Virus record (IMG/VR): IMGVR_UViG_3300028829_003504
Span: 197,789-261,788 of that record
Length of the DNA: 64,000 nt
Reading direction: 5' to 3' (one strand)
The notes beneath the pieces were generated by a model, which searched no databases, was not told the DNA's origin, and saw only the letters and a program-made list of their open reading frames with translations. How positions within the stretch are numbered: the stretch's first letter is position 1; each line of letters opens with the position of its first letter. The translations under genes and the position numbers were made by a program. Shown here piece by piece: positions 10,175 through 57,221 of this stretch.

Positions 10175-10623
10175 CAAATCGAAGACGTACAGGTGCTCCT
10201 CGTGGCGGTGTGGCTTCACGCGGAGGCAATCTATCCGGCCGTACTAGGACAGGTGAGCGATTACGTAGAACTAATTCTAGCCAGTCAGATAACTCTAGGG
10301 GCCTTAGATTGAGGCAGCTAAAGGAAGATAGACTAGAAGTTAATGGATGCACCTGCGATAACTGTAAACGTAGCTTAGATAGACAGCACTATACGGGTAC
10401 TATATATGGTGATCACATAGTACCCGTAGCACAAGGAGGTACTACCTCCAGAGGTAACATACAAATCCTATGTGAACGTTGTCATGAAAACAAAATAGGC
10501 AGTATAAACAGAAAAGGCAGAAACTTACTTAAGGCTAACGCTAAACGAGCTAATGCCCAAAGGAGAAACTCACACGAAGGGACTAAAACTAAACGTGGCG
10601 AGTCTTGGAGGAATTACGAGTAA
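10171..10623 (+). CDS. HNH endonuclease with Arg-rich N-terminus
   Basis: CDNC...GDHIVPVAQGGTTSRGNIQILCERCH. Confidence 0.88.
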   Translation: MTNRRRTGAPRGGVASRGGNLSGRTRTGERLRRTNSSQSDNSRGLRLRQLKEDRLEVNGCTCDNCKRSLDRQHYTGTIYGDHIVPVAQGGTTSRGNIQILCERCHENKIGSINRKGRNLLKANAKRANAQRRNSHEGTKTKRGESWRNYE

Positions 10624-29552: not shown

Positions 29553-29836
29553 TGTCTAACTTTGAATACCAAGGTAAAGGGTTCTATATGGCAAGAACTC
29601 AAGCTGGTTTGAAGAAAGCTATTAAGCATGCCGTCGGTGACGATGATTTTAGGAACCTTGCTATCGAGGGTTACCCTGAGAGTTACCCTTGCTTGGTTCA
29701 CATATACATTGTGTACAGAGGCTCTAGGTCAATAGTTGTTGATGCCTTACACTTCAACACTTTACGTAAGGCAATGGATGAATCAGATGCTAATCATATT
29801 GCTAATTCAGAAATCGTAAATAACCATTTTGGCTAG
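29552..29836 (+). CDS. hypothetical protein
   Basis: 94 aa, AAGGAG upstream. Confidence 0.7.
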   Translation: MSNFEYQGKGFYMARTQAGLKKAIKHAVGDDDFRNLAIEGYPESYPCLVHIYIVYRGSRSIVVDALHFNTLRKAMDESDANHIANSEIVNNHFG

Positions 29837-29861
29837 ACTCAGTAGCCGCACGGAGAAAATA

Positions 29862-30305
29862 ATGACCGGAACTTACATAGGATTGAAACCTACCAAAGAA
29901 TCAAAAGACGATATTAAGAAATTCGCTGAAAGCTTAGGCATCAAAAATTTACTACCCTCCGACAAGTACCACGTCACCATGTTATACGCTCCTGATGACG
30001 AAATAAAGTATACTGCTAAACCCAATCGCAAGTTTACTGCTCAGGTTACTGGAGCGGCGGTCTTAGGAGAAGGTAAATGGCAGGGTCTTGTATTGAAGAT
30101 GCGGAGCGCAGAACTACATCGACGACACATGGCTATCAAGAAACTATACGGTGAGATTCATTCATACCCTGATTTCACTCTGCATATTACGCTTAAGTAT
30201 AAGCCTGATACTAAGGACATCGAAGTACTCAAAGCACAACTGCCTGGAAGTATGAAGCTATCCTTCACAGGCGAGTACGTAGAGGAGCTTAAAGGCGATG
30301 GTTAG
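29862..30305 (+). CDS. acb1: 2H phosphoesterase, Acb1/T4 gp57B-like anti-CBASS nuclease
   Basis: Two HxT motifs (YHVTMLY, LHITLKY); GTY, LVLKMRSAELHRRH and EYVEELK match my recollection of T4 Acb1; ATG 29862 after GGAG. Confidence 0.8.
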   Translation: MTGTYIGLKPTKESKDDIKKFAESLGIKNLLPSDKYHVTMLYAPDDEIKYTAKPNRKFTAQVTGAAVLGEGKWQGLVLKMRSAELHRRHMAIKKLYGEIHSYPDFTLHITLKYKPDTKDIEVLKAQLPGSMKLSFTGEYVEELKGDG

Positions 30306-39783: not shown

Positions 39784-40845
39784 ATGGGTATTAGTATTGA
39801 ACGTAATAACTTTGTAAGCTTACAGCTTATGTGGAAATCCATAGTAGACGCTATGGTATCAGGAGGCTTCGAAGTGGAACTAGCAGCCGATGCAACAGGA
39901 GGTGTACTTAATATAAGTAGTGCAGGGACGTCCTACTCCGATAGTACTGTGTTGTACGTCCTTAAACCTACTACTGATGTTGATGCTCTTGCTGATACCC
40001 AACCTTGGCGTATAGTGATTCGCATCGAGAATATATCTGACGAGGTGGCTAACTCTTATTCAGTTAACGTAGTAACGCCAACTCAGATAATGTATGTACC
40101 GGGGTCGTCATTTGCTATAGCAGCACCTGATGAAGACAAGGAGCAAGGCTTACTTAACGTGGACGGGGATTCTACGGATTATAATCGTAGTTTCTTCCAC
40201 AGAGAGCCTGGTTCTTCTACTTGGAGTTGTTTTCCCTCAGAAACAAATGTAGAAGCAGTACCTCTATCGTATCGTATATCCGTATCCGATCATGGTATTG
40301 TATTGTTTACTTGGGCGGAAGCGCAAGATAGAGCAGGCGATTGTTTTAACTGGTTCTGTATACAGAGAGCCGTAGATTCAGATGGTGTAGTTCTTGTAGA
40401 CGGCCATGCCCCTTTATGGTGCGTGTTCTCTCAGGATGGGGGAGGCGGCTCTAACCTTGATACAGTTGACGCTGAGGGTATACGTAAGTTTGTAGTACGT
40501 GAAGACGATGTAAACGCACCTACAGAATCGGTTAGCGCTGTTGTACCTACAGCCGATTCCAGCCCTATAATAAATCCTATCCAGCAGGTCGCTATTAGCG
40601 AGAGTAATAAGTATATGTTGAACTTTCCACAAGGAATAAATACTCAACGTTACGCATACCCGCACCAACTGGATATGATATGCTATACGTCCGCAGATGT
40701 AATATCGCAGTACAGTGAGCCTTCGCTCCTTATCTACGGTGAAACACAGCCGCGGACGTATAAGGCTATGAATGCCAACTTCAAGGATAACAAAGGCATG
40801 CGAATGCTTATGTTGATCGTGGGTTCAGGTATTTCTGCCACTTAG
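39784..40845 (+). CDS. putative structural protein, paralog family copy 1
   Basis: Shares SYRxxV..HGI, WFCIQR, PLxCVxSxxGGG, FVxRExD, GLNxxRYxYP, YxAMxAN...NxGMR with the 40936 and 54495 genes. Confidence 0.7.
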   Translation: MGISIERNNFVSLQLMWKSIVDAMVSGGFEVELAADATGGVLNISSAGTSYSDSTVLYVLKPTTDVDALADTQPWRIVIRIENISDEVANSYSVNVVTPTQIMYVPGSSFAIAAPDEDKEQGLLNVDGDSTDYNRSFFHREPGSSTWSCFPSETNVEAVPLSYRISVSDHGIVLFTWAEAQDRAGDCFNWFCIQRAVDSDGVVLVDGHAPLWCVFSQDGGGGSNLDTVDAEGIRKFVVREDDVNAPTESVSAVVPTADSSPIINPIQQVAISESNKYMLNFPQGINTQRYAYPHQLDMICYTSADVISQYSEPSLLIYGETQPRTYKAMNANFKDNKGMRMLMLIVGSGISAT

Positions 40846-40935
40846 TATTTGCATGCCTCAAACATGTAATTTTTAGTATGATATCTTGAAGTGGGATATC
40901 TAAATTTAATTCTAAATAAATTAGGAGTACCCGTA

Positions 40936-42096
40936 ATGGCTACTATTGAAAAACGTAATCTGGTAGGAATGGAAGCAGTTGTCCAATCACTAGTGACAGA
41001 CTTGGCCGCTAATGGCTTTGAGATAATGAACGTGAACGACAATGATAGCAATTTAACTATTGACGGTGAGTCGAAGCGAATTTTAATGCGACCTACAACG
41101 GCAGTAGATCCTCTTGCTATTGAAGAGTCTGATTCGGGGAATGCGTCTTATGACTCTAGACAACCTTGGCGTTTAATGTTTGAAGTAGATAACGATGAAG
41201 GTGGCTTTCGTATTTGGGCTAATACACCTACAAACGTTATGGTTGATAGTGCTACTAAAGAAGTAACTATGTCTAAGAGCGTAAGCGTAGGTGATACAGA
41301 CTTCGCTACATCAGGTTTACTTACATATAAATCGTTAGACAAATCCGCGCAGAACACCAGAAAGGTTTTAGCGCCTGAAGGTGATTTAGCCTCAGCAGCT
41401 CAGAGTAAGTGCTACACAATGAACGTTGCTTATTGGGGAATCGATCTAACTAAAATAGATTACGAATCATTTCCTATGTCGTACCGTCTAACTGTTACGC
41501 CTCGAGGTATAATGGTAATGGTATGGGTAGAATCACGCGATAATCATGGTGCATCTTACGGTTGGTTCTGTATTCAACGTATGGTTGACGTTACAGGCGG
41601 AGCGGTATTGGACGGTAAAGCTCCTCTATTTTGTGTATTCTCTGAGAATGGTGGTGGTGGTGCTAGAGCTGATGGTACAGGAACTATAGCGTTAGACGGT
41701 ACTACCTATGACGCGTTAAACGCTCCTGAGCCTGATGGTATTAACCAGTTTGTTATACGTGAAGGCGATATAAATGCACCAGATATTCCGCACAGTGCGG
41801 TAATTGACACAGCAGATGCAACCCGTATTATTAACAGTACTCAGCAAGTAAGTACGTCGGAAGATAACCAGTTTATCCTTAATTTCGCAAAAGGTTTAAA
41901 TACTCAACGTTACTCTTACCCTCATGAGCTTGACCTATTCGCTTATACTTCTGCGGATGTTATTTCTCAATGGTCAGAAACTGAGGTAACCGTATACGGC
42001 GAATCTACACCACGTAAGTACAAAGCAATGAATGCCAACCACATTAACAACAAAGGTATGCGTATCTTAATGTTAGTAGAAGGCGGCGGCGTTTAA
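40936..42096 (+). CDS. putative structural protein, paralog family copy 2
   Basis: Same motifs; ATG 40936 after AGGAG. Confidence 0.7.
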   Translation: MATIEKRNLVGMEAVVQSLVTDLAANGFEIMNVNDNDSNLTIDGESKRILMRPTTAVDPLAIEESDSGNASYDSRQPWRLMFEVDNDEGGFRIWANTPTNVMVDSATKEVTMSKSVSVGDTDFATSGLLTYKSLDKSAQNTRKVLAPEGDLASAAQSKCYTMNVAYWGIDLTKIDYESFPMSYRLTVTPRGIMVMVWVESRDNHGASYGWFCIQRMVDVTGGAVLDGKAPLFCVFSENGGGGARADGTGTIALDGTTYDALNAPEPDGINQFVIREGDINAPDIPHSAVIDTADATRIINSTQQVSTSEDNQFILNFAKGLNTQRYSYPHELDLFAYTSADVISQWSETEVTVYGESTPRKYKAMNANHINNKGMRILMLVEGGGV

Positions 42097-46177: not shown

Positions 46178-47995
46178 ATGTTAAGCGAATCCGCTAAGTT
46201 TGAAAACTTAGACCAATTCAAATGGTACACCTATACAGGTCGTAATAAGAATCTGGTAGCAAGAAAGCATGAGAGACTATTAGTGAAAGGTGCCGTATAC
46301 GGCATGAAAGCCATTAGGGGTGATAAATTCTATATAGTCTTTCCTGAAGACTACCACATTGACTTTACGGTTACTAAGCGTGTAGGCCTTAATATATCTA
46401 AAAACTCTAAACTTAAGCGTAAGCCACCTCCACTGACTAATAACAAGGGAGAGGGAGGTCGTGCTTCTCGCACACTAGGGCCTAAAGGCCTTGGTAGAGT
46501 CCAAAAGGCCCAAGAGAAGTCTAAGTGGGATGCTACTTACTTCAAGCCGCAAGCTCGGGTAGGGGATGAATTGAAGAACGGTATAAGTTTCGAGAATTAC
46601 CAATGGCGTAATTTTACGGACATAACTCCCATTAGGAAGCGTAATGGTACCAAGGTTGTTCACTCATTCCCAAAGAAGTCTATTGTAGGTGTCCGCTTCT
46701 TACGTGATAGTAAAGGAGCTAAACTAGTTACTACTGATGGTAAAGTACTTACTATAAGTAAAGAGCAGTTTGATATGGTACTTAACGCATCGAAAGTAAT
46801 GCCTAAGAATAAATGGCCTGAAGGGACCATCTCTGTTGAAGAAATGGCTGAGAACCTTCAGTACGAAAAAGAATCGGACAAGGCCCGACGCATTTCTGAT
46901 AGAAACCTAGCCAGAGCCGATAACGAAGCAGCTAGGCGTGAAAAGAAGAATCAGGAGCGTAAGAAGAGACGGGAGGATCAAGAAGCCATTAGGTCCGAAC
47001 GCGAGAGATTGAAGCGAAGACTTGAGGGCCGTAAGAAAGAAGTCAATCTTACTATGAAACCTAAGACCAGTAAAGAGCTTGCGGATATATTAGTGCAGGG
47101 TAAAAAGCCTAAAGAGGACGAGGGCGTATTATCTGATATGGATCTGCAAGAGAATCTAGACGCCCTTAAGCAGATGGACTTGGATTCAGATGATACTCAG
47201 GACTACGATGACGAAGAGTCTGGAGGGGAAGGTGGTACTTCTAATGACTTCGATGATAGTGACCTGTCGGACGCAGATATGCCTGACCCTGAAAACCGTG
47301 ACTTCGATGATAACGAATCCGATAAACTTATGGACGACCTTGACGAATTAATCGAGCAGCGACACGAGCAGGCATTTAGTTTAGGTGACCTTGACGGCGA
47401 AGACGAAGAGGAAGACCTTGACGAAGAGGAAGACCTTGACGAAGAGGAAGACCCGGACGAAGAGGAAGACCCGGACGACCTTGACGAAGAGGAAGACCCG
47501 GACGACCTTGACGAAGAGGAAGACCCGGACGACCTTGACGAAGAGGAAGACCTTGACGAAGAGGAAGACCCGGACGACCTTGACGAAGAGGAAGACCCGG
47601 ACGAAGAGGAAGACCCGGACGTCGCTATTGCTGAGGAGGAGCTAGGAGAAGAAGGAGAAGAGGAAGACCTGGACGAAGAAGGTGACTCTAATCCTAAAGA
47701 CTATGTATCAGAAGAAGGTGACGTGGTTTTATTCCTAAGTGATGATAGCGATAAACGTGAGTACGTACTACTTGACATATTCCCACTACCTGCAAACAAT
47801 AACATCACTGTGTATAAGGTGTACGATGTAACCAACAAGCCTGACGTGTTCAATACTGTCCGTGTAGCAAAAGGCTCTCGTAATAAGTTTGAGAATATGG
47901 TTAAGTTCCTGCGCAAAATGAATCCAAAAGAATATAGTGGCTACTATACCTCAGCCGAACTTATGGATAGGTCTAAGAGTCCTATTAACAGCTAA
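46178..47995 (+). CDS. putative internal virion protein with basic N-half and acidic repeat region
   Basis: Starts MLSESA; DEEEDL/DEEEDP repeats. Confidence 0.65.
   Translation: MLSESAKFENLDQFKWYTYTGRNKNLVARKHERLLVKGAVYGMKAIRGDKFYIVFPEDYHIDFTVTKRVGLNISKNSKLKRKPPPLTNNKGEGGRASRTLGPKGLGRVQKAQEKSKWDATYFKPQARVGDELKNGISFENYQWRNFTDITPIRKRNGTKVVHSFPKKSIVGVRFLRDSKGAKLVTTDGKVLTISKEQFDMVLNASKVMPKNKWPEGTISVEEMAENLQYEKESDKARRISDRNLARADNEAARREKKNQERKKRREDQEAIRSERERLKRRLEGRKKEVNLTMKPKTSKELADILVQGKKPKEDEGVLSDMDLQENLDALKQMDLDSDDTQDYDDEESGGEGGTSNDFDDSDLSDADMPDPENRDFDDNESDKLMDDLDELIEQRHEQAFSLGDLDGEDEEEDLDEEEDLDEEEDPDEEEDPDDLDEEEDPDDLDEEEDPDDLDEEEDLDEEEDPDDLDEEEDPDEEEDPDVAIAEEELGEEGEEEDLDEEGDSNPKDYVSEEGDVVLFLSDDSDKREYVLLDIFPLPANNNITVYKVYDVTNKPDVFNTVRVAKGSRNKFENMVKFLRKMNPKEYSGYYTSAELMDRSKSPINS
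47402..47620 (+). repeat. coding tandem array of 18-bp units with 9-bp GACGACCTT inserts
   Basis: GACGAAGAGGAAGACC(TT/CG) about 12 times, encoding DEEEDL/P. Confidence 0.95.
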
Positions 47996-48003
47996 ACTGT
48001 AAG
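47994..48003 (+). promoter_or_regulatory. AAACTGTAAA motif
   Basis: Upstream of ligase; near-copy TACTGTAAAT at about 48013. Confidence 0.5.
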
Positions 48004-48052
48004 GATTCCTTATACTGTAAATCACGTATTATGCGAATTACGGAAGTATACT

Positions 48053-50014
48053 ATGACACAAAGGTTAAGTAAAAGACAATTGATTGCAGACCCAGTAGGG
48101 TACGCACAATCACTAGAAAAGCCATTACTAGAAAGTCTGTTGGATAGATTGGACAAAGCTTTCCACAATGATATGGACCCCTTAATTTCCGACTATAGCT
48201 ACGAAGAGATTATGGACTGGTATAGAGATAAGTGGCCTAAAGCTAAAAGGTTAAAGCAGACAGGTATTAGGCTTGGTAATAAGCAAGAGGAGGTAAAGCT
48301 TCCTAACTTCATGCCTAGTTTATTGAAGGTTAAACCTGATACAAAAGAGTTTTCGTCCTACGTAGATAACTATATAGGTCCGTACGTACTAACTGACAAA
48401 CTCGACGGCATTAGTCTTCAAATTATATACGAAGGCGGACGCCCTACTAAAGTTTATACGCGCGGTAACGGACTTATGGGTAAAGACGTTTCTCGTCACA
48501 TACCGAACTTTAAGATACCTAAACGTATTAGCACTAAATCACGTATTGCCGTTAGAGCCGAAGCTATTCTTAATGAAAGTACGTTCCAGCGTAAGTTCAG
48601 TAAAGACAGTGGCGGTAAGTATACCGCAGCACGTAATACAGCGGGTGGGTTTATTAATAACACCAAAGGCGATAGCACTGGTCTAAAGTCAGTTGATGTT
48701 ATTGTCTATGAAATGCTCGAAGGGCCGAACGCCAATAAGAAGCTTAGCACGCAGTTGAAGTATATGGAGAAACTTGGATTCAAAGTAGTCCATCATCGGA
48801 CAGTTAAATCAATTGATAGCGCCAAGCTCAGTAAGTACTACGCAGATCGCGTTAAGAACAGCAAGTACGAAATTGACGGTATAGTTGTAGCCAATAATGC
48901 GCCCTATGTGAGACGTTCCTCGTTACCTAAACACGCTAAAGCCTTTAAAGAAAACTCACGTTCTGATATGAAAGACGTTAAGGTACTTAAAGTATCTTGG
49001 GAGTTATCTAAAGGCGGTAAGATTATCCCACGTATATGGTATGCTAAGACCACATTAGGAGGTGTCAGTAATGATAAAGCTACAGGACATAATGCGTTCT
49101 TCGTTATTAATGGCTTTAGGCAAAAAGAGATTAAAGATAACAAGCCAGTTATGCCGCTCGGACCTGGCGCTGTTGTCCGAATCGTCCGTAGTGGTAAAGT
49201 TATACCACATATTGTTGAAGTCGTTAAAGCTGCTCGTGGCCGCAAGCCTCAAATGCCTGATGTACCTTATGTTCTTCGTGGTGCTGATGCTTATTACTCT
49301 GGTGAGCGTCACGGTGATACTTATGCAAAGCAGATTACACACTTTTTCGTTACGATAGGTGTTGACGGATTGAAGCTTACTTCGGTTAAGAAGCTAATAG
49401 ACGCAGGTCTAGATTCAGTTAAGAAAATAATTGAAGCCACCGAAGAAGATTATGCCTCTATTGATGGTATCGGTGAAGTTAAAGCTAAACAGTGGTCCCG
49501 TCAGATTAAGATTAAACTTAAACAGACGGATGCAGCCACATTGGCGGATGCCTCTGCAATTTTCATAGGCTTTAGTAAAAGTAGGCTAGATACTCTGTTT
49601 AGTATATTCCCTAGTACTTTAGCTATGAGCAAGTGGACTAAATCTAAGGTTCTAGCTAGGATACACGGTTCAACTACAGGCTTTAAGAAACTTGCCGATA
49701 ACTTCGTTGATATGCTACCTAAGTTTATAGACTTTGTAGAAGATAACGAGTTGATTTTACGTAAACCTAAGAAAGCACCTAAGCCTAAAGGTAATAAGTT
49801 CAGTACTTATAAGATTACGTTCACTGGTGTTAGAGATAAAGACCTGCAGCATTATATTGAGGAGCAGGGAGGTATTGTTCAGAACATGAAGTCCGATACT
49901 AACATGCTGCTTATTAAAGATGATTCATATACTTCAAGTAAGATAGATAAAGCCAATGCTAAAGGTATACCTGTTCTTACCTTGATTCAGTTCAAAAAGA
50001 AATTTAAAATGTAA
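48053..50014 (+). CDS. ligA: NAD+-dependent DNA ligase
   Basis: Domain Ia ISDYSY, KLDG adenylation motif, RGNG, EIDGIV, SGKVIP, HhH region, C-terminal BRCT (ITFTG). Confidence 0.92.
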   Translation: MTQRLSKRQLIADPVGYAQSLEKPLLESLLDRLDKAFHNDMDPLISDYSYEEIMDWYRDKWPKAKRLKQTGIRLGNKQEEVKLPNFMPSLLKVKPDTKEFSSYVDNYIGPYVLTDKLDGISLQIIYEGGRPTKVYTRGNGLMGKDVSRHIPNFKIPKRISTKSRIAVRAEAILNESTFQRKFSKDSGGKYTAARNTAGGFINNTKGDSTGLKSVDVIVYEMLEGPNANKKLSTQLKYMEKLGFKVVHHRTVKSIDSAKLSKYYADRVKNSKYEIDGIVVANNAPYVRRSSLPKHAKAFKENSRSDMKDVKVLKVSWELSKGGKIIPRIWYAKTTLGGVSNDKATGHNAFFVINGFRQKEIKDNKPVMPLGPGAVVRIVRSGKVIPHIVEVVKAARGRKPQMPDVPYVLRGADAYYSGERHGDTYAKQITHFFVTIGVDGLKLTSVKKLIDAGLDSVKKIIEATEEDYASIDGIGEVKAKQWSRQIKIKLKQTDAATLADASAIFIGFSKSRLDTLFSIFPSTLAMSKWTKSKVLARIHGSTTGFKKLADNFVDMLPKFIDFVEDNELILRKPKKAPKPKGNKFSTYKITFTGVRDKDLQHYIEEQGGIVQNMKSDTNMLLIKDDSYTSSKIDKANAKGIPVLTLIQFKKKFKM

Positions 50015-50023
50015 GGTACACTA

Positions 50024-50470
50024 ATGGACATATTTGTTTCAAATAACCAAACACTAGACAGCGCCTTCGAGTCCCATTTAATAAAGGATGCGGAGCGTAT
50101 GAGCAGGAACAAAAGGAGTCGTGAGACTTTAATTTATCTTAATCCAAAGGACTTTCTAAAACTAGCGGAAGGAGTAAGGCACTATGACGAAGCTAAGCAC
50201 GATACGGTAAAAGGGGTCTTATCTAGAGGTGAGAGCTTCGACGCACTTCCCTACCTAAAGACTAAATTAATCAATGGCCGTGAGTTTAAGGTGACAGGTC
50301 ATGAGGGTCGTCATCGTAGTATTTACTTACATCAAAAGTTCCCTAATAAACTAATACCGATTAGACTTATAGATTCATCAATGCGTTGGGGTGAAGACGG
50401 TCTAAGTAATTCTGAGATTACTCTAGAAGCCGAATCTTCTAGACTCAGAATTAACGTAATAGTTCCTTAA
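50024..50470 (+). CDS. hypothetical protein with ParB/Srx-like motif
   Basis: LPYL...VTGHEGRHR; N-terminus MDIFVSNN. Confidence 0.45.
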   Translation: MDIFVSNNQTLDSAFESHLIKDAERMSRNKRSRETLIYLNPKDFLKLAEGVRHYDEAKHDTVKGVLSRGESFDALPYLKTKLINGREFKVTGHEGRHRSIYLHQKFPNKLIPIRLIDSSMRWGEDGLSNSEITLEAESSRLRINVIVP

Positions 50471-50485
50471 GGCAGAGGATTTAAC

Positions 50486-51646
50486 TTGATACTTATGAAT
50501 GGGATACTCCTAGGGACTTTAATCGCACTGCATGGAATTCTAGCAGTAGGACTAGGTGTATTGTTAAATGGCGATTTAATAAAAGCAAAATCATTAAGGC
50601 AGTTTCAGTTATACTTCGTATCTGTAGCCTTAACTTGGACAGTTCTTTATTTAAAAGGTCCAATCGTACAAGAAGGATGGATAGGTACACTAGGGTATTT
50701 ACCTTTCTTTCTGAGTTATATACTTCTATTAGCGGCAGTATGTTTACATGCAGGACATAAAGCACCTGTTAGACGGAGTCTTATAGCATCTGCGTTAATT
50801 GCCTTCTATCTAGCCTTACTATACTGCTCACGAAGTTCAGTAATACATATTACGGATATGTATCAAGTATTAGCTTTAGGTTATTGTTGGAATCTATGTA
50901 GATTGAGGTATGAAAGGACGCATAACATCGGAGACCATTACCTATCTAACTTTATGTTACTTGGCATCATTACTTTAAGTGCCCGAACTCTGTATGTTTA
51001 TGTTAACGGGAACCTCGGATCGGGTTTTGTATACACAGCCGTAGCATTTACATTAGTTAACGTAGGTATATGCTTATCTATAATGGCTAGTTACTTCCTA
51101 GAAGTAAAAGTGGCTCTTGAGAAACAGGCAAATACGGATAGTCTCACAGGAGTGTATAATCGACGGTACTTTACGTCTAGCTTGGAGCAAACACACGCGT
51201 CCTGTAAGAGACGCAATTCCACATACTCTATTATTATTTGTGATATTGATTTATTTAAGAATGTTAATGATACTTATGGTCATATTTGTGGAGACTTAGC
51301 TTTAATTAAAGTCGCTCGATGCTTAGACAAAATTAAAAGATGCGAGGATACCCTATCTAGGTATGGAGGAGAGGAGTTTGTATTTCTGCTTCCTGATACA
51401 AAGCTTGAAGAGGCTACTAAGTTGGCTGAACGCTTCCGTCGCAAAGTAGCGGATCTGACAATCGACCTGGGTCAGAAGTCCCTATCATTGACCATGAGCT
51501 TTGGAGTAGCCGGAGTGTACGGTATGTCGGATCCCTCTGATGTAGTCGGAGACGCGGACATAGCCCTTCTGTATGCTAAAGGTGACGGAAGGAATGGAGT
51601 CTATTACTCGGATCGTGGAGTGCTTCATTCAGGAAAGACCCTATAA
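50486..51646 (+). CDS. membrane-bound diguanylate cyclase (multi-TM plus GGDEF domain)
   Basis: About 7 hydrophobic segments; ANTDSLTGVYNRR, CDIDLFKNVNDTYGHICGD, RCED I-site, SRYGGEEF, TMSFGVA, ADIALLYAK..GRN; start may be ATG 50495. Confidence 0.95.
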   Translation: MILMNGILLGTLIALHGILAVGLGVLLNGDLIKAKSLRQFQLYFVSVALTWTVLYLKGPIVQEGWIGTLGYLPFFLSYILLLAAVCLHAGHKAPVRRSLIASALIAFYLALLYCSRSSVIHITDMYQVLALGYCWNLCRLRYERTHNIGDHYLSNFMLLGIITLSARTLYVYVNGNLGSGFVYTAVAFTLVNVGICLSIMASYFLEVKVALEKQANTDSLTGVYNRRYFTSSLEQTHASCKRRNSTYSIIICDIDLFKNVNDTYGHICGDLALIKVARCLDKIKRCEDTLSRYGGEEFVFLLPDTKLEEATKLAERFRRKVADLTIDLGQKSLSLTMSFGVAGVYGMSDPSDVVGDADIALLYAKGDGRNGVYYSDRGVLHSGKTL

Positions 51647-51671
51647 GCACCTTGTTCTAGGAACATAATAA

Positions 51672-51700
51672 ACCTTGCTGTGTTCACATGGCGAGGTCTT
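51672..51700 (+). terminator. probable terminator after DGC
   Basis: ACCTTGC ... GCGAGGT stem followed by CTTT. Confidence 0.45.
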
Positions 51701-51755
51701 TGGTATCTAATGTCAATAATTGGTACCAAATTTAACCTTTTTAGTAGGACATAAT

Positions 51756-52814
51756 ATGTATAAGAAACATATGGTAGGCACTGAGAGCTGGAGGGACTTC
51801 ATAGCGGAAGCACCTAACTTTAGACTTGAAATATACTCAGGCATACCTTTCTATTTGGACCTGCAGCAACTGCTGATACAAGGGGCTGTAAGTTTTGAAG
51901 GTGAGAGCCCTATACCAGATTTAAGTACCCATATTGGGGATGACGGCCAACCGTTAGGAGACCCTCTTCTATATACCGTAGAAGAGCTCCCCTTACGTGG
52001 ATGGAACTATATACCTATAACGATTATGGACCCAGTTAATGCCATAGTCAGAAACACTAGAGACCGACGCGGCTGGGTGATAACGGCCGCTCCAGGATAT
52101 GAAGGTGAAGACTGCTTTAACTACTTTCTAACAAACGGCTTTCAGGCATCCGGGTATGGTAAAGTAGAACTTATAATACTTCCTTGGTATGAGTTACTTG
52201 TCGAGATACAATATAATCCAGATACAGGTCAGTATAGATTCGAAGCGGATATTAAAGTACCCTCAGGTGCCGAAGTACCTACCTTCCAATCCTATAGATG
52301 GACTTTCTTAGGACCTAATGACTACGACGGAGATAACCTAGTTTCTTTTGATGAAACAGGTGTCTTTATGAGTACGTTCTATAAGATTGAAACATTCGGT
52401 ACTTGGAGACGTAGCTACGATAAAGCTGTAGTGTACCGCACTGGTAAAGATACAGGTTGGATTACAGTACCTTCGGACACAGATGTGGATGGAATGAAGG
52501 ACCCTATGACCGGTCTACCTTACTCGGCTAATGGTACCTTATTGGATATAGTTATAGAAGTAGACTTGTACTTAGATGGTACTAGTACTCTACCTAATTT
52601 CAGTCCTACTGGTCGGACTTATACAATAAGGAAAAAGCTAAGTGACCTCCTCGGTATGTCTGACTGGTCAAAATCAGGACTGATAGATAACCTAAGTAAA
52701 CCTACTGTAGATGAAGCTTCCGGTAATGTCTCTCCTCCTTATGCAATTGAGACCGAAGCTCGGACACATTCTGTCGATGACCCTTACGTCCCAGACGTAG
52801 ACTCCCCTGTATAG
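51756..52814 (+). CDS. putative structural/fibre-associated protein
   Basis: ATG 51756 after AGGA; beta-rich, acidic. Confidence 0.55.
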   Translation: MYKKHMVGTESWRDFIAEAPNFRLEIYSGIPFYLDLQQLLIQGAVSFEGESPIPDLSTHIGDDGQPLGDPLLYTVEELPLRGWNYIPITIMDPVNAIVRNTRDRRGWVITAAPGYEGEDCFNYFLTNGFQASGYGKVELIILPWYELLVEIQYNPDTGQYRFEADIKVPSGAEVPTFQSYRWTFLGPNDYDGDNLVSFDETGVFMSTFYKIETFGTWRRSYDKAVVYRTGKDTGWITVPSDTDVDGMKDPMTGLPYSANGTLLDIVIEVDLYLDGTSTLPNFSPTGRTYTIRKKLSDLLGMSDWSKSGLIDNLSKPTVDEASGNVSPPYAIETEARTHSVDDPYVPDVDSPV

Positions 52815-54485
52815 GTGAAATATATGTATTTAAGATTCAATTTAGCTGATAACTTACCGTATCTGTACGATATGAAATATTTTAACAATTCCGACTCCGA
52901 GTTATATACGGATGATGGTATTGAGATGAACCTGACGGATATAGGACCTATTGCTAGTGGATGCTACGCAGGTAAGGGTAGACTCAGGAAGGGAGAAGAT
53001 GCACAAGCCATGCAGGATAGGGTAGACTATCCTATTTTCTTGAAAGCCCAACATGATTTTAAAGAACATTTAGGTGAATTTAGAGATTACTATATTGAAG
53101 TACCTATTGTACTTAACAGTGATATACTAACTCAGTATAGCTACAAGATTAGGCATAATGGTTTGGACTCACCTACAGAGCCTCTATTTTGGACAGAATC
53201 CGATTGGGAGACTTATTGGGACCTGACACCCGGCTCATTCAATAGTTCAGTGCATGGTCAGAACTTCCACAAAAAGATAAGTATAGCCGACCCGAAGCAG
53301 AACCCTGGTATATTTTATTTAATGCACCCTTATTACGGACCTATACCTGGCGAGTCTGACTTCGAAGAAGAATACTACCAAGGCGAGGCCAGCCTAATAG
53401 CTAGCGTAGCTACAGGTGGTTCTATTCCTCAGGAATTCATACTGGGTAATTGCTTTAACTATGCAGCGAGAGAGAGAACTACGCCTGACTACGAGGCCTT
53501 CTTGAAGGTAAGTATAATACGGGACGAAGACTCCAACGGAACGGTCGATATAGTAGACGGATATAAATCCGTAATCTATAATATGTTAGATAGGCCCTCT
53601 GATTATAAGGTCAGCGGGTTGGGTATTCGTATAACACTAACTACACCTTTACCGCGTGATTTAGATTTCATAATATCGCTGGAGCCCGCCTTTAGTACTT
53701 TGACTGGTGTAGACCTTATTGACAGTATACCTGTACTTGAAGAAGTTTACGGACTTACCGATGATACTATCATGTCTGTGATTCCTACGCCTTCAGGCAT
53801 ACCTAACACAGAGTTTAAGTCGGAATTAAAGACCACTACAATATTGGCAGGATCTACGATTTCCTTATTACCTATTACTTTGAATCGACCTGTCGATGGG
53901 CGTTACGCACTAGTAGCGCGAGTCCACTCCTTTGATAATCGCGATGGTTTAAAAATACTTAACAATGATATATTAATAACAAATACTATGCACACCGCCG
54001 ATACTTACGACGATAGTGACTTGGCCGTTAGTACTCGTATAAATATTTATGACTCATCCCATGCTTTGGTGTTTACTTCCGATTCGCTATCTTCTATTCA
54101 AGCTACGTTGCCTAAAGGTGACGACTACCTTGTCGAGTTCGTTCATGAGTACTTCAATAGGTTAAAAACTGAATATAGATTAGGCCAAGGATTATCCCCT
54201 AGTATAACGGATAGGTATACGGCGGAGAAGCATCATAAATTCTCCGTGACTACAAAGTCTGACGGCAATTTAACAGTAATTGATAGTGTGGACAACGCTC
54301 CCTCTAGAGTTATTAGCGGTTGGCTAATAGCTGGAGGTAGTACGTCCAAGAGCTTATACAGTTTACCTAGTTCGATATCAGGAAGTGCTATTTCATTTGA
54401 GTGTAACTTTGGTTATAACTACGGTATAGTAGATAGTACAGTTACTACTAACGCCACAATACTATTAAACATAAACTTAACTTAA
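52815..54485 (+). CDS. putative fibre/adhesin-like protein with Calx-beta-like segment
   Basis: 556 aa; IRITLTTPLPRDL...ILAGST pattern. Confidence 0.5.
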   Translation: MKYMYLRFNLADNLPYLYDMKYFNNSDSELYTDDGIEMNLTDIGPIASGCYAGKGRLRKGEDAQAMQDRVDYPIFLKAQHDFKEHLGEFRDYYIEVPIVLNSDILTQYSYKIRHNGLDSPTEPLFWTESDWETYWDLTPGSFNSSVHGQNFHKKISIADPKQNPGIFYLMHPYYGPIPGESDFEEEYYQGEASLIASVATGGSIPQEFILGNCFNYAARERTTPDYEAFLKVSIIRDEDSNGTVDIVDGYKSVIYNMLDRPSDYKVSGLGIRITLTTPLPRDLDFIISLEPAFSTLTGVDLIDSIPVLEEVYGLTDDTIMSVIPTPSGIPNTEFKSELKTTTILAGSTISLLPITLNRPVDGRYALVARVHSFDNRDGLKILNNDILITNTMHTADTYDDSDLAVSTRINIYDSSHALVFTSDSLSSIQATLPKGDDYLVEFVHEYFNRLKTEYRLGQGLSPSITDRYTAEKHHKFSVTTKSDGNLTVIDSVDNAPSRVISGWLIAGGSTSKSLYSLPSSISGSAISFECNFGYNYGIVDSTVTTNATILLNINLT

Positions 54486-54494
54486 GGAATCTGT

Positions 54495-56024
54495 ATGGGT
54501 ATATCATTAACTCGAAATAACTACACCTCACTACAGAAGATGGTGCACGACGTCCATCAGGACTTGGTTGCGGGAGGATTTAAGCTTATTCTACAAAGAG
54601 ACGCAATTGAAATGGAGGATGACTCTATGGTTATTAGTCCTGAGATTGTGGAGGTAGCGCCTGACTGGACTAAAGCAGGATTATATGTGTTTGAGGCAAG
54701 TCCTTCTGTTGATCCTTTTGCCGTATATGAGCCTTACAACATAGTGTTTATGGTTCATAGGAAATGGTGGAAGGTATTCGTATGCACTCCAGTAGGTTTA
54801 ATCTACGACACGTTCAATGACACGTTCTCCGTAGAGTCCTACACAGATGAATACTGGCCGTTCGCAAGCATAGGGGAAGACCAGCAAAGATGGGTAGGTG
54901 CCTTAACCGTAGACGGCGTATCTTCCGACACAGGGATCGGACAGCAATTTTTAAGCTTCCATAGCGAGTTTTCTACATGGCCATCTTTAAGACAGAATGC
55001 AGTAGACGAGCACGGAGTATTAGAGTTAGAATCGTCCCCTCTAAGTTACAGAATTACAGTAGAGGCACATGGCATTGTATTTTGCACATGGGCTGAAAAC
55101 ATGGATGATAGAGGAGATTGCCATTCTTGGTTTTGCATACAGCGACCTAAACAGTCAGACGGTGAAATATTACCCTATACGGGTAAGCATCCGCTGTGGT
55201 GTGTATACTCTCAAAATGGTGGCGGGAATCCTAATGATATGTCAGCCTTTCCTTCAATGGATGTAAACGGTATAAGACAGTTCGTTGTCAGAGAGCGTGA
55301 CATAGATTTACCTAGCCACAGTTGTAGTGCTGTACTGGGAGAAGGTGAGCACTCAGCCATAATAAATCCTATGGAGCAAACCAGCTTACAGGAGGACGGA
55401 ACGTACTTACTTAATATACCTAGCGGCTTGAACTCATGGAGATATGTATATCCTTACTTATTGGATTTAATTGCATTCTCAAGCGCAGACCTATCCGCTC
55501 ACGGTTATAATGTAACACATGACGTATTTGGTAATGGCGAACCTATTACATACTACGCTATGAAAGCCAATAGACCTGAGAACAGAGGCATGAGGATGTT
55601 CATGAAAGGACCTGATGTTAATGCTGCGGACGAGCAAGAGCCTTTCGAAGTACCTTTATACTTTTACGTACGTCACCTTTTCCGTGCAGCTACAGAATCT
55701 AACGTGATGCCTCTAATATTTGTAGAAATTGAATTAATGGAAGGCGTTACTTCTACCAGCTACCCTGCACCTAGGGATATAGAAATACCTTTCACTATAG
55801 ATCCTAGTAGCACTGCGTTAGAGGGAATTGATTACGTACTAACCTCACATAATAACCATATACTTATTCCTGCAGGCAGCACTAAAGGTAGACTATACGG
55901 ACAGATACTTCCGCGATCAGGAGATAATGGTACGAGGTCTGTGACGTTTATACTAACAGATAACCTAGGTGAAGGTAACTTACTAAGTAGTCCTATATTC
56001 ACCATACAAGACAGTATTGTCTAA
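54495..56024 (+). CDS. paralog family copy 3 with C-terminal Calx-beta-like domain
   Basis: Family motifs as in 39784 and 40936, plus TALEGIDY...LIPAGST...RSVTFIL. Confidence 0.7.
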   Translation: MGISLTRNNYTSLQKMVHDVHQDLVAGGFKLILQRDAIEMEDDSMVISPEIVEVAPDWTKAGLYVFEASPSVDPFAVYEPYNIVFMVHRKWWKVFVCTPVGLIYDTFNDTFSVESYTDEYWPFASIGEDQQRWVGALTVDGVSSDTGIGQQFLSFHSEFSTWPSLRQNAVDEHGVLELESSPLSYRITVEAHGIVFCTWAENMDDRGDCHSWFCIQRPKQSDGEILPYTGKHPLWCVYSQNGGGNPNDMSAFPSMDVNGIRQFVVRERDIDLPSHSCSAVLGEGEHSAIINPMEQTSLQEDGTYLLNIPSGLNSWRYVYPYLLDLIAFSSADLSAHGYNVTHDVFGNGEPITYYAMKANRPENRGMRMFMKGPDVNAADEQEPFEVPLYFYVRHLFRAATESNVMPLIFVEIELMEGVTSTSYPAPRDIEIPFTIDPSSTALEGIDYVLTSHNNHILIPAGSTKGRLYGQILPRSGDNGTRSVTFILTDNLGEGNLLSSPIFTIQDSIV

Positions 56025-56090: not shown

Positions 56091-57221
56091 ATGAAAATCG
56101 CTATATATGCAATATGTAAGAACGAGCAGCATAACATTGTTTCATTTTTAAAAAATACAATGTATGCAGACACTATAATAATAACCGACACAGGTAGTAC
56201 CGATGATACCGTACGGATATTAGAAGAGCAATCTTTGATTAATTCTAAAATTGTACTACATAAGGCTGAATTTGAACCCTTCTCATTCTCAGGCGCCCGT
56301 AACTTCTGTCTAGCTCAGGTACCTGAGGATATAGATTACTGTTTATATTTAGACTTAGATGAAAGACTTGAGGAGGACTGGCTTAAGAAGTTAGAGCCTC
56401 TATTGGCACATCAGCCTACCCACATCACTATGGACATGGTAACTTCTCGTGATGAATCAGGTAACGTAGCTTCCTCTTATTACCAAACACGATGCCATAG
56501 ACGCGAAGGATATAGATGGCGTTACCCTTGCCATGAAGTCTTGCAGTGCGAATGGACTAATGGTGACAAACGTACTATAAGTAGTGCCATACAAGTAGAG
56601 CACTATCCTACGTTAGATAAAGAACGTAACTACTTGGGTTTACTGGAGCAAGGCGTAGTCGAATACCCAAACGACCAACGTATGCTTTATTATTACGGCC
56701 GTGAGCTTTACATGGCCAAGAACTATCTTGACGCGATAGCTGCGCTAGACAAAGCCTGTTATGCGACAGAACTTTGGTGGGATAGACAAACTGCATCCTG
56801 CTTTAAGTATATGGCCTTATGTGCCGTAGAGCTGAAAGACCATAAGTTGGCTGAAACTTACTATTTAAAGTATTTAAGCTACAGTACGGATGAGGCTGAA
56901 TCGTGGTACGAAGTAGCCATGTTCTACTACTCCCAAGGGCTCTACCACTTGGCTTTAGGTTATTCAAAAAGATGTATAGATTTAGGTCAATCTAAGACAA
57001 AACCTAGTAATTTCTTATTTAGAGACTTGAGTTGCTGGACATGGAAACCCCATGATTTAGCAGCTTACTGCTCCTACCATCTTAAAGATAGTTCTGGATA
57101 TGCAGCACATGCCACACTGGCTTGTAACCATAATCCTCAGGATGGGCGTCTACAAGCTAATATGGAAGACGCACTCAGGAATGTTACAGTAGTAAAAAGG
57201 ACCGTGGATGAAGATACTTGA
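56091..57221 (+). CDS. GT2 glycosyltransferase with C-terminal TPR repeats
   Basis: ICKNE, DTGSTDDT, FSGARN, LDLDE (DxD), HEVL; YYYGRE and TPR-like helices. Confidence 0.9.
   Translation: MKIAIYAICKNEQHNIVSFLKNTMYADTIIITDTGSTDDTVRILEEQSLINSKIVLHKAEFEPFSFSGARNFCLAQVPEDIDYCLYLDLDERLEEDWLKKLEPLLAHQPTHITMDMVTSRDESGNVASSYYQTRCHRREGYRWRYPCHEVLQCEWTNGDKRTISSAIQVEHYPTLDKERNYLGLLEQGVVEYPNDQRMLYYYGRELYMAKNYLDAIAALDKACYATELWWDRQTASCFKYMALCAVELKDHKLAETYYLKYLSYSTDEAESWYEVAMFYYSQGLYHLALGYSKRCIDLGQSKTKPSNFLFRDLSCWTWKPHDLAAYCSYHLKDSSGYAAHATLACNHNPQDGRLQANMEDALRNVTVVKRTVDEDT

What the first reader, a model, noticed from the sequence alone, without database searches (positions are those of the whole stretch)
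50486..51646. Phage-encoded, apparently intact membrane diguanylate cyclase
Seen: multi-TM N-terminus, DSLTG linker, metal-binding D and K/N/D in DIDLFKNVND, GGEEF active site and RxxD inhibitory site. The gene sits between a ParB-like gene and fibre-like genes and is followed by a hairpin. Established: c-di-GMP represses flagella, remodels pili and induces exopolysaccharide, and some phage receptors depend on it. DGCs are ordinary bacterial genes but, to my knowledge, rare in lytic phages. Inference: the phage raises c-di-GMP to remodel the host surface (superinfection exclusion, aggregation of hosts, or induction of a glycan receptor). The TM domain may sense envelope state.
Basis: partly seen in the sequence, partly recalled or inferred. 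Interest (0 to 1): 0.78.

Follow-up and report, generated by a model that had tools for sequence, protein, structure and literature searches.

The report
Jumbo-phage membrane diguanylate cyclase gene
An uncultured 260-kb phage and its relatives carry an intact, selection-maintained gene for a membrane enzyme that should make the bacterial signal c-di-GMP, so the virus probably alters host behaviour or surface, though this is untested.

Summary
Window 50486-51646 (+) encodes a 386-aa protein with seven predicted N-terminal membrane helices and a complete GGDEF domain (Pfam E=6e-44). Every residue needed for c-di-GMP synthesis is present, and so is the RxxD product-inhibition site.

It is a real phage gene, not a chimera. 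The window is the end of a 261-kb contig syntenic with jumbo phages NCTB and PaBG. The identical gene sits in the same context in four assemblies. Four diverged homologues (50-65% identity) sit at the same place, downstream of the DNA ligase and directly after a 148-aa gene. Selection is purifying (dN/dS 0.07 in the only unsaturated pair), composition is phage-typical, and the five proteins form one clade with no close bacterial relative.

The membrane module has no sequence relative among 1.84 billion representatives, but its predicted fold resembles bacterial 7TM-GGDEF proteins. NCTB, PaBG and other cultured relatives lack the gene.

It is not unique as a kind. Jumbo phages G and SP-15, and several large viral contigs, also carry GGDEF proteins with intact active and inhibitory motifs. 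I found no experimental study of any of them.

Host, timing of expression, activity and purpose are unknown. The same window also encodes an Acb1-like protein and a RelA/SpoT-type HD protein.

The parts
50486..51646 (+). Phage diguanylate cyclase gene, 386 aa (gene callers give 383 aa from the ATG at 50495)
   Evidence: ORF list; Pfam GGDEF E=6e-44; identical gene in four assemblies; conserved TTG/GTG start
50474..50479 (+). Shine-Dalgarno-like AGAGGA, 6 nt upstream of the TTG start
   Evidence: Sequence; equivalent GGAG/AGGA plus GTG arrangement in L003, L007, L008, L010
50486..51103 (+). Seven-helix membrane module (aa 1-206), predicted N-out/C-in, with no periplasmic domain; no sequence relative outside this phage clade
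   Evidence: Hydropathy and charge distribution (9 K/R in inside loops against 2 outside); AF2 helices; no Pfam family; profile search of 1.84e9 representatives finds only its own cluster; predicted fold resembles bacterial 7TM-GGDEF clusters, TM 0.82-0.85
51104..51151 (+). Short helical linker continuing TM7 (aa 207-217) into the DSLTG motif (aa 218-222)
   Evidence: AF2 continuous helix 177-215; invariant NTDSLT
51128..51595 (+). GGDEF catalytic domain (aa 215-370)
   Evidence: Pfam; TIGR00254; AF2 pLDDT about 88; Foldseek hits to SiaD, WspR, DgcR, PleD, DgcZ, E 1e-15 to 1e-12
51242..51271 (+). DIDLFKNVND: metal-binding Asp (D253), K258 and N261. The guanine-specific Asp D270 follows at 51293-51295
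   Evidence: Alignment to PleD; invariant in all five homologues
51338..51349 (+). I-site RCED (R285-D288), five residues upstream of GGEEF
   Evidence: Sequence; R285, E287, D288 invariant; aligns to PleD R359xxD362
51365..51379 (+). A-site GGEEF (aa 294-298)
   Evidence: Sequence; invariant
51672..51697 (+). Hairpin downstream of the gene (11-bp stem, weak T-tract); terminator function doubtful
   Evidence: z=-1.4; no equivalent in L007
50024..50470 (+). 148-aa gene always immediately upstream of the DGC. It is specific to the same phage clade and is possibly of ParB/Srx-like fold
   Evidence: Adjacent in window, L003, L007, L008, L009; only three clusters in 5.8e9 proteins; not homologous to the small ORFs at this position in PaBG or NCTB; weak ParB_N leads
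48053..50014 (+). NAD-dependent DNA ligase. Anchors the synteny and heads the tightly packed ligase / 148-aa / DGC gene string
   Evidence: Pfam; 39% to Phage NCTB and 37% to PaBG; intergenic gaps of 9 and 15 nt

Best explanation
A clade of uncultured PaBG/NCTB-related jumbo phages acquired, once and long ago, a gene for a membrane-anchored diguanylate cyclase and has kept it under purifying selection.

Shown:
- It is a phage gene.
- It has seven predicted TM helices with the C-terminus in the cytoplasm, and a short helical linker.
- Its GGDEF domain carries every catalytic, metal-binding and guanine-specifying residue, plus the RxxD feedback site.

Inferred:
- During infection the protein inserts into the host inner membrane and dimerises through the 7TM bundle.
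- It converts 2 GTP to c-di-GMP up to a ceiling set by I-site product inhibition.
- The raised, possibly membrane-local, c-di-GMP pool drives the host's own effectors. In typical Pseudomonadota hosts this means motility off and adhesins, pili and exopolysaccharide changed.
- That would benefit the phage by keeping the infected cell in a host-rich patch and/or removing receptors so that later phages are excluded.
- Packing directly behind the DNA ligase gene suggests co-expression with replication genes rather than with late structural genes.
- The always-adjacent 148-aa protein may be a partner.
For: Enzyme:
- Pfam and TIGRFAM GGDEF score far above threshold.
- All PleD-equivalent residues are present and invariant across five homologues that differ by up to 50%.
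- The model has a confident GGDEF fold matching active DGC structures.

Phage origin:
- Tail sheath, family A DNA polymerase, SNF2 helicase, ligase and Acb1 lie in the window.
- Gene order matches PaBG and NCTB.
- The contig is 261 kb, the same element is in IMG/VR, and a relative is on a 311-kb contig whose name ends in '_c', which I read as circular.

Retention:
- The position is the same in five lineages.
- dN/dS is 0.07 for the only unsaturated pair. Elsewhere pN is 0.2-0.35 with pS saturated, equally in the TM and GGDEF halves.
- Divergence is similar to the neighbours': DGC 65% against ligase 72% and glycosyltransferase 71%.
- GC and codon usage are at the window median.
- The five proteins are monophyletic, SH-aLRT 99.

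Topology: positive-inside rule, 9 against 2.

Precedent that phages profit from c-di-GMP manipulation: phage peptides that bind the P. aeruginosa cyclase YfiN (PMC8085984) and N4's c-di-GMP-dependent glycan receptor (PMC8669472), both listed.
Against: - There is no biochemical, expression or host information.
- The biological pay-off is extrapolated from bacterial c-di-GMP physiology. It would fail in a host with little c-di-GMP signalling.
- The closest cultured relatives (NCTB, PaBG, Lu11, the Erwinia, Dickeya and Yersinia phages) do without the gene, so it is accessory.
- Dimerisation and constitutive activity are assumed, not modelled.
- The N-terminal three helices of the model are low-confidence (pLDDT 40-50).
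Confidence: 0.6

Rival explanations
1. Counter-defence by signal jamming. The phage makes c-di-GMP to interfere with host cyclic-nucleotide immunity. It could act as a competitive ligand for CBASS-type receptors, or switch c-di-GMP-responsive regulators so that defence genes or abortive-infection responses are repressed. Behaviour or surface change would not be the purpose.
For: - The same 64-kb window encodes a strong Acb1 homologue (PF23474, E=9e-27, 94 bits against a cutoff of 27).
- It also encodes a RelA/SpoT-type HD protein. This phage therefore already invests in nucleotide-signal warfare.
- Acb1 is reported to need an adenosine at the scissile site (review PMC10419184), so it should spare c-di-GMP.
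- The same review describes a phage nucleotidyltransferase that makes 3'3'-cGAMP to compete with c-di-GMP at TIR-STING. That is a precedent for phage-made cyclic dinucleotides as decoys.
Against: - No known defence effector is reported to be inhibited by c-di-GMP. Bacterial TIR-STING is activated by it, which would make the enzyme suicidal in such hosts.
- The I-site limits output to signalling-range concentrations rather than flooding.
- There are no PADLOC hits and no linkage to the Acb1 gene, which lies 20 kb away.
Confidence: 0.13
2. Glycan control. The c-di-GMP activates a membrane glycan synthase, either the host's (cellulose, Pel, PNAG or MSHA-type systems) or one cooperating with the phage's own GT2-TPR glycosyltransferase. 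The result builds or masks a surface polysaccharide: a receptor for progeny, or a shield against competitors. The membrane anchor would serve local signalling.
For: - A GT2 glycosyltransferase with TPR repeats lies 4.4 kb downstream (56091-57221).
- Jumbo phage SP-15 has its standalone GGDEF gene embedded among glycosyltransferase and sugar-nucleotide genes.
- N4 infection depends on a c-di-GMP-dependent glycan (PMC8669472).
Against: - The GT2 gene is conserved in PaBG and NCTB, which have no DGC, so the two are not an obligate pair.
- No PilZ or other known c-di-GMP-binding domain was found in any window ORF scanned.
Confidence: 0.12
3. Carrier-state fitness factor. The phage persists (pseudolysogeny or chronic carriage) and the DGC acts as a conversion gene, making carrier cells sessile or biofilm-forming, rather than acting in a lytic cycle.
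For: Most GGDEF hits in IMG/VR are on contigs of roughly 5-85 kb, some from isolate genomes, a size range compatible with prophages. A comparative-genomics paper on jumbo phages lists prevention of superinfection during pseudolysogeny among their strategies (abstract of PMC7824862).
Against: No integrase or repressor was seen in the 64 kb examined. All genes are co-oriented in a lytic-type layout and the gene is packed with replication genes. Only a quarter of the genome was inspected.
Confidence: 0.08
4. Not a working cyclase: a degenerate receptor-type GGDEF, an enzyme with another product (a Hypr-type cGAMP synthase), or an assembly chimera with host DNA.
For: No activity data exist. The gene is absent from cultured relatives.
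Against: - The A-site, metal site and I-site are intact and invariant.
- The specificity position is Asp (D270 = PleD D344), not the Ser that I recall for Hypr enzymes.
- The gene has an identical context in four assemblies and conserved synteny at 50-65% identity.
- Composition is phage-typical and selection is strongly purifying.
Confidence: 0.04

Closest known systems
Bacterial membrane-bound GGDEF diguanylate cyclases with multi-TM N-terminal modules (about 400-aa 7TM-GGDEF proteins of Pseudomonadota). Catalytic-domain references: PleD, WspR, SiaD, DgcR
   Same: - The architecture matches: seven TM helices, a short helix, then GGDEF.
- Atlas structural neighbours include a 371-member cluster in which every member carries GGDEF, TM 0.83.
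- The catalytic domain is 31-40% identical to SiaD, WspR, DgcR and PleD in the Foldseek alignments, with the same A-site, I-site and guanine-specific residues.
   Different: - It is encoded by a phage.
- The TM module has no detectable sequence relative outside the phage clade.
- It passes no NCBIfam equivalog for any named cyclase.
- No bacterial homologue exceeds about 48% identity, and then only in the GGDEF domain.
GGDEF genes of cultured jumbo phages: Bacillus phage G gp350, Bacillus phage SP-15 SP15_150, Microcystis phage MaAM05 EMOOHJMP_00052
   Same: All are very large phages carrying a GGDEF gene. G and SP-15 also keep RxxD plus GG(D/E)EF.
   Different: - They are independent acquisitions, only 33-36% identical in the domain.
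- SP-15's is a 183-aa GGDEF-only protein and G's is 254 aa with about 2 TM segments. MaAM05's lacks the canonical motif.
- Hosts are Bacillota or cyanobacteria.
- None has the 7TM module or the 148-aa neighbour.
GGDEF proteins on large IMG/VR viral contigs (L045 181 kb, L090 329 kb, L024 190 kb, L039 81 kb)
   Same: They carry RxxD plus GGEEF. L045 and L039 have at least 5 TM segments and L090 has 2; L024 has none. L090, L024 and L045 sit in phage-like neighbourhoods.
   Different: They are 27-40% identical and have unrelated N-termini and unrelated phage backbones. Their viral status was checked only by a few PHROG hits, and L039's neighbourhood was not checked.
Phage modulators of host c-di-GMP that are not enzymes (the YfiN-binding peptides of Pseudomonas phages, PMC8085984)
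   Same: The target pathway is the same: a phage altering host c-di-GMP.
   Different: Those act by binding a host cyclase. Here the phage brings its own synthase.
PaBG (Baikalvirus) and Phage NCTB jumbo phages
   Same: The backbone is shared. Ligase is 37-39% identical and DNA polymerase 53% identical to NCTB. The order of the large 1322-aa protein, the KMPT-N protein, the ligase, the 364-aa protein's homologue and the GT2 gene is shared with NCTB; for PaBG only the KMPT-N protein, the ligase, the GT2 gene and two downstream genes were detected.
   Different: They have no GGDEF gene at the locus, and none anywhere at E<=1e-6. The 148-aa gene, the DGC and the 556-aa gene have no counterpart at this locus in either, and the 509-aa gene matches only a paralogue gene elsewhere in the NCTB stretch.

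Membership tests
GGDEF diguanylate cyclase (PF00990 / TIGR00254) | Domain model above the curated threshold | tested here: met
   PF00990 150 bits against 23.8; TIGR00254 155.5 against 37.4
GGDEF diguanylate cyclase (PF00990 / TIGR00254) | Active-site GG(D/E)EF, metal-binding Asp (PleD D327), K332, and guanine contacts N335 and D344 | tested here: met
   GGEEF 294-298, D253, K258, N261, D270. Aligned to PleD and invariant in five homologues
GGDEF diguanylate cyclase (PF00990 / TIGR00254) | GGDEF (palm-like) fold | tested here: met
   AF2 pLDDT about 88 over aa 215-380. Foldseek hits to 3ign, 6tts and 4zvh with target TM 0.88-0.95, rmsd 1.1-2.1
GGDEF diguanylate cyclase (PF00990 / TIGR00254) | Converts 2 GTP to c-di-GMP as a dimer | not testable with these tools
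   Needs an enzyme assay. Dimerisation through the 7TM bundle is inferred only
I-site (product-inhibited) DGC subclass | RxxD exactly five residues upstream of GG(D/E)EF | tested here: met
   R285-C-E-D288, then TLSRY, then GGEEF; invariant
Hypr GGDEF (cGAMP-producing) enzymes | Ser in place of the guanine-specific Asp (PleD D344 position). This criterion is recalled from the literature | tested here: not met
   The position is D270, invariant
Named DGC orthologue groups (SiaD, PleD, DgcA, DgcR, DgcN/YfiN, DgcQ, AdrA, DgcJ and others) | NCBIfam equivalog score above the curated cutoff | tested here: not met
   The best is SiaD at 160.7 against a cutoff of 290. All hits cover the GGDEF domain only
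Described membrane sensor domains (MASE1-9, 7TMR-DISM_7TM, 5TMR-LYT, HisKA_7TM) | Pfam model match in the N-terminal 210 aa | tested here: not met
   No family even at E<=10 in four homologues. The profile search finds only its own cluster. There are only language-model leads at 0.75-0.77 to 7TMR-DISM_7TM and HisKA_7TM
Generic bacterial 7TM-receptor fold fused to GGDEF | Seven-helix bundle superposable on bacterial 7TM-GGDEF models | tested here: inconclusive
   Atlas TM 0.82-0.85 over 208 residues. Both sides are predictions, helical bundles match easily, and my own model has pLDDT 40-50 for helices 1-3
PaBG/NCTB-like jumbo phages (group around Baikalvirus) | Shared backbone genes in conserved order; genome about 260 kb | tested here: met
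   contig 261,472 bp. Identities of 37-53% place it outside the genus
ParB/Srx N-terminal domain (for the 148-aa neighbour) | PF02195 match or ParB/Srx fold with the GxxRxxA-type motif | tested here: inconclusive
   No Pfam or PDB hit and AF2 pLDDT 47. In the Atlas, 18 of 100 feature hits carry ParB_N and structural TM is 0.40-0.45 over aa 31-121. The motif is GHEGRHRS

The most novel reading that the evidence does not exclude
The 148-aa protein and the 7TM-DGC form a phage-private, two-gene second-messenger module found only in this clade. The phage would produce c-di-GMP at the membrane and read it with its own nucleotide-binding (ParB/Srx-like) partner or other phage proteins, either to time its own programme or to jam host cyclic-nucleotide immunity alongside Acb1 and the SpoT-like hydrolase. 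On this reading a virus uses c-di-GMP as its own signal rather than merely perturbing the host's.
Probability: 0.12. Interest if true: 0.85.

Novelty: new member of a known kind. Interest (0 to 1): 0.5.

Why it matters
c-di-GMP governs the switch between motile and sessile life, and much of the cell surface, in most bacteria. Phages are known to depend on these traits or to tamper with them indirectly.

A virus-encoded, feedback-regulated synthase kept for a long evolutionary time would be direct evidence that large phages reprogram host behaviour through the host's own second messenger. GGDEF genes also occur in several unrelated jumbo phages (G, SP-15 and large IMG/VR contigs), and none that I could find has been studied. 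That points to a general, untested strategy.

This clade offers five natural variants with a compact 386-aa protein, which suits expression, mutational and c-di-GMP reporter tests. The sequence-orphan 7TM module is a candidate new input domain.

Tried and rejected
- Megablast of 48000-54000 against 50,697 phage records gave no match, so the phage has no close cultured relative.
- N-terminal module: Pfam on four homologues at E<=10 gave nothing. A five-sequence profile against 1.84e9 representatives found only itself. The apparent full-length 27% BLASTP alignment to an IMG/VR protein (L039) is anchored by the GGDEF half and is not evidence for TM homology.
- 148-aa neighbour: the profile search against PDB gave only spurious ribosomal S15 hits at E 0.2. 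Pfam found nothing. AF2 pLDDT was 47, so I ran no fold search. hhalign to the small ORFs at the same position in PaBG and NCTB gave probability 0.1.
- Host or donor inference failed. Cluster look-up returned no taxon names. The best bacterial hit is Marinomonas ostreistagni, 40% over aa 147-375, among a taxonomically mixed list. The tree shows no supported sister. The careful search did not finish, so I used the quick IQ-TREE tree with all 120 rows kept. No tRNA genes. Sample identifiers are not in the literature library.
- Terminator: the hairpin is not significantly stable and is not conserved. Sigma-70-like promoter counts do not exceed shuffles.
- PADLOC gave no defence-family hit for the DGC, its neighbours, the HD protein or Acb1.
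- 'Escherichia phage vB_EcoS-683R6 diguanylate cyclase' turned out to be E. coli DgcM in host flank DNA, so I rejected it as a precedent. The Acinetobacter, Listeria, Salmonella and 'Bacteriophage sp.' records among the hits are whole-genome contigs or unannotated fragments, and I did not count them as precedents.
- Literature: nine searches found no experimental study of a phage-encoded GGDEF enzyme. The library lacks most subscription journals, so this is not proof of absence.
Full report
**1. What is there**

The ORF at 50486-51646 (+) exists as described and encodes 386 aa. Pfam places a full-length GGDEF domain at aa 215-370 (E=6e-44), and NCBIfam's domain model TIGR00254 agrees.

The sequence carries four motifs:
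- DSLTG (aa 218-222)
- DIDLFKNVND (aa 253-262)
- RCED (aa 285-288), followed five residues later by
- GGEEF (aa 294-298)

A residue-by-residue alignment to PleD maps D253, K258, N261, D270, R285xxD288 and GGEEF onto PleD D327, K332, N335, D344, R359xxD362 and 368-372. The PleD numbering is from my knowledge of the PleD literature. The specificity position is Asp, not the Ser that I recall for cGAMP-forming Hypr enzymes, so the expected product is c-di-GMP.

AlphaFold2 on a five-sequence alignment gives a confident GGDEF fold (pLDDT about 88). It is preceded by seven helices between aa 2 and 215; the first three are low-confidence. Foldseek finds SiaD, WspR, DgcR, PleD, DgcZ and DosC.

Hydropathy and charge distribution give seven TM segments. 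Nine Lys/Arg lie in the predicted inside loops against two outside. This puts the N-terminus outside and the GGDEF domain in the cytoplasm. Outside loops are only 6-9 residues long, so there is no periplasmic sensor domain.

**2. Start codon and surroundings**

Gene callers start the protein at the ATG at 50495 (383 aa). In all five lineages, however, a TTG or GTG lies nine bases upstream of that position, with a Shine-Dalgarno 6-8 nt before it. In two lineages the ATG position reads ACG.

The gene follows a 148-aa gene after 15 nt, and that gene follows the NAD-dependent DNA ligase after 9 nt.

A hairpin lies at 51672-51697. It is no more stable than shuffled sequence (z=-1.4), lacks a good T-run and has no counterpart in a relative.

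The downstream genes are not demonstrably fibres. The 364-aa and 556-aa proteins are unknown. The 509-aa protein belongs to a PHROG annotated 'tail sheath' and has two paralogues upstream.

**3. It is a phage gene, not a chimera**

The window carries these phage-type genes:
- a tail sheath
- a family A DNA polymerase
- a 1944-aa SNF2 helicase
- an HNH endonuclease
- an Acb1 homologue

All large ORFs are co-oriented.

The ligase and polymerase are closest to Phage NCTB (39% and 53%), and then to PaBG, Lu11 and the Erwinia, Dickeya and Yersinia jumbo phages. Gene order around the ligase matches NCTB and PaBG.

The protein's own contig is 261,472 bp. From the reported coordinates the window is its last 64 kb. 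The same gene, with identical nucleotides where compared, sits in the same context in a JGI metagenome, a Logan assembly and an IMG/VR genome of 261,788 bp.

GC content and codon usage of the gene are at the window's median.

**4. A conserved clade-specific gene**

Only four other proteins in 5.8 billion share the whole length, at 65, 61, 60 and 50% identity. All four lie in the same position: ligase, then up to two small genes, then the 148-aa gene, then the DGC. One is on a 311-kb contig whose name ends in '_c', which I read as circular.

Catalytic and I-site residues are invariant, and so are many polar residues of the membrane module:
- N28-G29-D30 and AKSLR in the first cytoplasmic loop
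- H16 and H88
- T123-D124
- N147, G149 and D150
- N192

The one pair that is not saturated gives dN/dS 0.07. The other pairs have pS of about 0.8 with pN 0.2-0.35, alike in both halves.

Divergence matches the neighbours: against L003 the DGC is 65% identical, the ligase 72% and the GT2 gene 71%. A domain tree puts the five together (SH-aLRT 99) with no supported bacterial sister. No bacterial genome holds anything closer than about 48% in the GGDEF domain.

I read this as a single, old acquisition followed by vertical descent.

NCTB and PaBG have neither the DGC nor the 148-aa gene at this locus. None of the cultured relatives appears among the 106 phage records with a GGDEF match at E<=1e-6.

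**5. The membrane module**

It matches no Pfam family. A profile of it finds only its own cluster among 1.84 billion representatives. By predicted structure it resembles the N-terminal modules of bacterial 7TM-GGDEF and 7TM-HTH proteins, with TM 0.79-0.85.

It is therefore a sequence-orphan version of a common bacterial architecture. It is as strongly constrained as the catalytic half, which argues for more than a passive anchor. The signal, if any, would be intramembrane or at the cytoplasmic face.

**6. The 148-aa neighbour**

It is restricted to the same clade and is always adjacent to the DGC. It has no Pfam, PDB or PADLOC match and models poorly.

Its GHEGRHR motif and repeated weak Atlas hits to ParB_N families make a ParB/Srx-like nucleotide-binding fold a lead, not a finding.

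**7. How it probably works**

Shown: an intact, I-site-bearing, membrane-anchored GGDEF enzyme encoded by a phage and maintained by selection.

Inferred:
- The protein inserts into the host inner membrane and dimerises.
- It makes c-di-GMP up to the level allowed by product inhibition.
- Host c-di-GMP effectors are engaged, giving motility arrest and changes to pili, adhesins and exopolysaccharide.
- The phage benefits through retention in host-rich patches and/or receptor loss that excludes later phages.
- The gene is co-transcribed with the ligase.

I give the overall statement 0.6. The enzymatic part alone I would put near 0.85, and the specific pay-off near 0.4.

The rivals are:
- interference with cyclic-nucleotide immunity (0.13). 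This is made more interesting by the Acb1 homologue and the SpoT-type HD protein in the same window, and by the reported adenosine requirement of Acb1 (PMC10419184)
- local activation of glycan synthesis (0.12)
- a carrier-state conversion function (0.08)
- inactivity, another product, or an assembly artefact (0.04)

**8. Comparison with what is known**

As an enzyme it is a member of the GGDEF family with an I-site. It is not a member of any named cyclase orthologue group, nor of the Hypr subclass.

As a phage feature it has precedents that were annotated but, as far as nine literature searches show, never studied. Bacillus phage G gp350 (254 aa, about 2 TM) and SP-15 SP15_150 (183 aa, set among sugar-modification genes) both have RxxD plus GG(D/E)EF. 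Microcystis phage MaAM05 has a degenerate copy.

IMG/VR holds at least 151 viral contigs with relatives, mostly of roughly 5-85 kb, a size range compatible with prophages. It also holds contigs of 181-329 kb carrying intact GGDEF proteins in phage-like neighbourhoods; one of these proteins has at least five TM segments and another two.

All cultured phages that I could identify as carriers are jumbo phages. Other 'phage' hits are unreliable as precedents: one is a host flank, and others are whole-genome contigs or unannotated fragments that I did not count.

**9. Verdict**

It is a new member of a known enzyme kind, in a context that is uncommon, recurrent in very large phages and experimentally unexplored. 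Its function in infection remains inference.

Interest is moderate (0.5). It is not a new mechanism, but it gives a clean, testable entry to the question of whether phages write the host's c-di-GMP signal themselves.

Noticed in passing
window 29829-30305 (+): A 158-aa protein matches the anti-CBASS nuclease Acb1 (PF23474, E=9e-27, 94 bits against cutoff 27) and more weakly the 2H 2'-5' RNA ligase superfamily. This phage probably degrades host cyclic-oligonucleotide immune signals.
   Followed up: partly
window 18521-19369 (+): A 282-aa protein has an HD_4 domain (E=5e-8) that aligns to the N-terminal hydrolase region of RelA/SpoT (TIGR00691 positions 11-82). It is a candidate small alarmone, (p)ppGpp, hydrolase, lying just upstream of the DNA polymerase gene.
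   Followed up: partly
window 56091-57221 (+): GT2 glycosyltransferase fused to TPR repeats (PHROG 'beta-1,4-glycosyltransferase', E=2e-79). It is conserved in PaBG, NCTB and the 311-kb relative, so it does not depend on the DGC.
   Followed up: partly
window 46178-47995 (+), repeats at 47398-47621: A 605-aa protein has an N-terminal KMPT-N domain and an extremely acidic C-terminal half. That half is encoded by imperfect 18/27/45-bp tandem repeats (DLDEEEDPD-type units). It is 74% identical to the L003 homologue over the N-terminal 402 residues, the extent of the best alignment.
   Followed up: partly
window 39784-40845, 40891-42096 and 54495-56024 (+): Three paralogous genes all hit the same single NCTB gene (BN7874_241). 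The third matches PHROG 12249 'tail sheath'. The canonical sheath (PF04984) is a different gene, at 32127-33782.
   Followed up: no
window 34540-38994 (+): A 1484-aa protein lies just after the sheath gene and a 215-aa gene, the place where PaBG has its 'tail fiber/intimin-like' gene. It has weak partial hits to Rib and HORMA models; the HORMA hit covers only about 30 residues and is probably spurious.
   Followed up: no
window 10171-10623 (+): A free-standing HNH endonuclease gene overlaps its neighbours' ends, like a homing-endonuclease insertion. It lies about 1.4 kb upstream of the 1944-aa SNF2 helicase gene.
   Followed up: no
L003 11133-11678 and L009 3327-3872: In two relatives a 181-aa ORF of unknown function overlaps the 3' end of the DGC gene by 32 nt. 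L003 has a further 425-aa gene after it, and L009 has another ORF that runs off the contig end. The window phage, L007 and L010 lack the 181-aa ORF. The region downstream of the ligase is a hotspot for accessory genes.
   Followed up: no
L172 (ON470595.1, Escherichia phage vB_EcoS-683R6): The 'diguanylate cyclase' annotated in this phage record is E. coli DgcM flanked by ttcA, dbpA and zntB, so it is host chromosome included in the record. Other GGDEF hits in the phage collection come from records that are whole-genome bacterial contigs (Salmonella) or unannotated fragments labelled Acinetobacter phage MD-2021a, Listeria phage LM or Bacteriophage sp.; I did not check those individually.
   Followed up: partly
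L171 (Bacillus phage SP-15, 133541-134092 of KT624200.1): SP-15's 183-aa GGDEF-only protein keeps RxxD and GGEEF. It sits inside a cluster of UDP-glucose dehydrogenase, UTP-glucose-1-phosphate uridylyltransferase, glycosyltransferases and a glycerophosphotransferase, which may link it to sugar or DNA-modification pathways.
   Followed up: no
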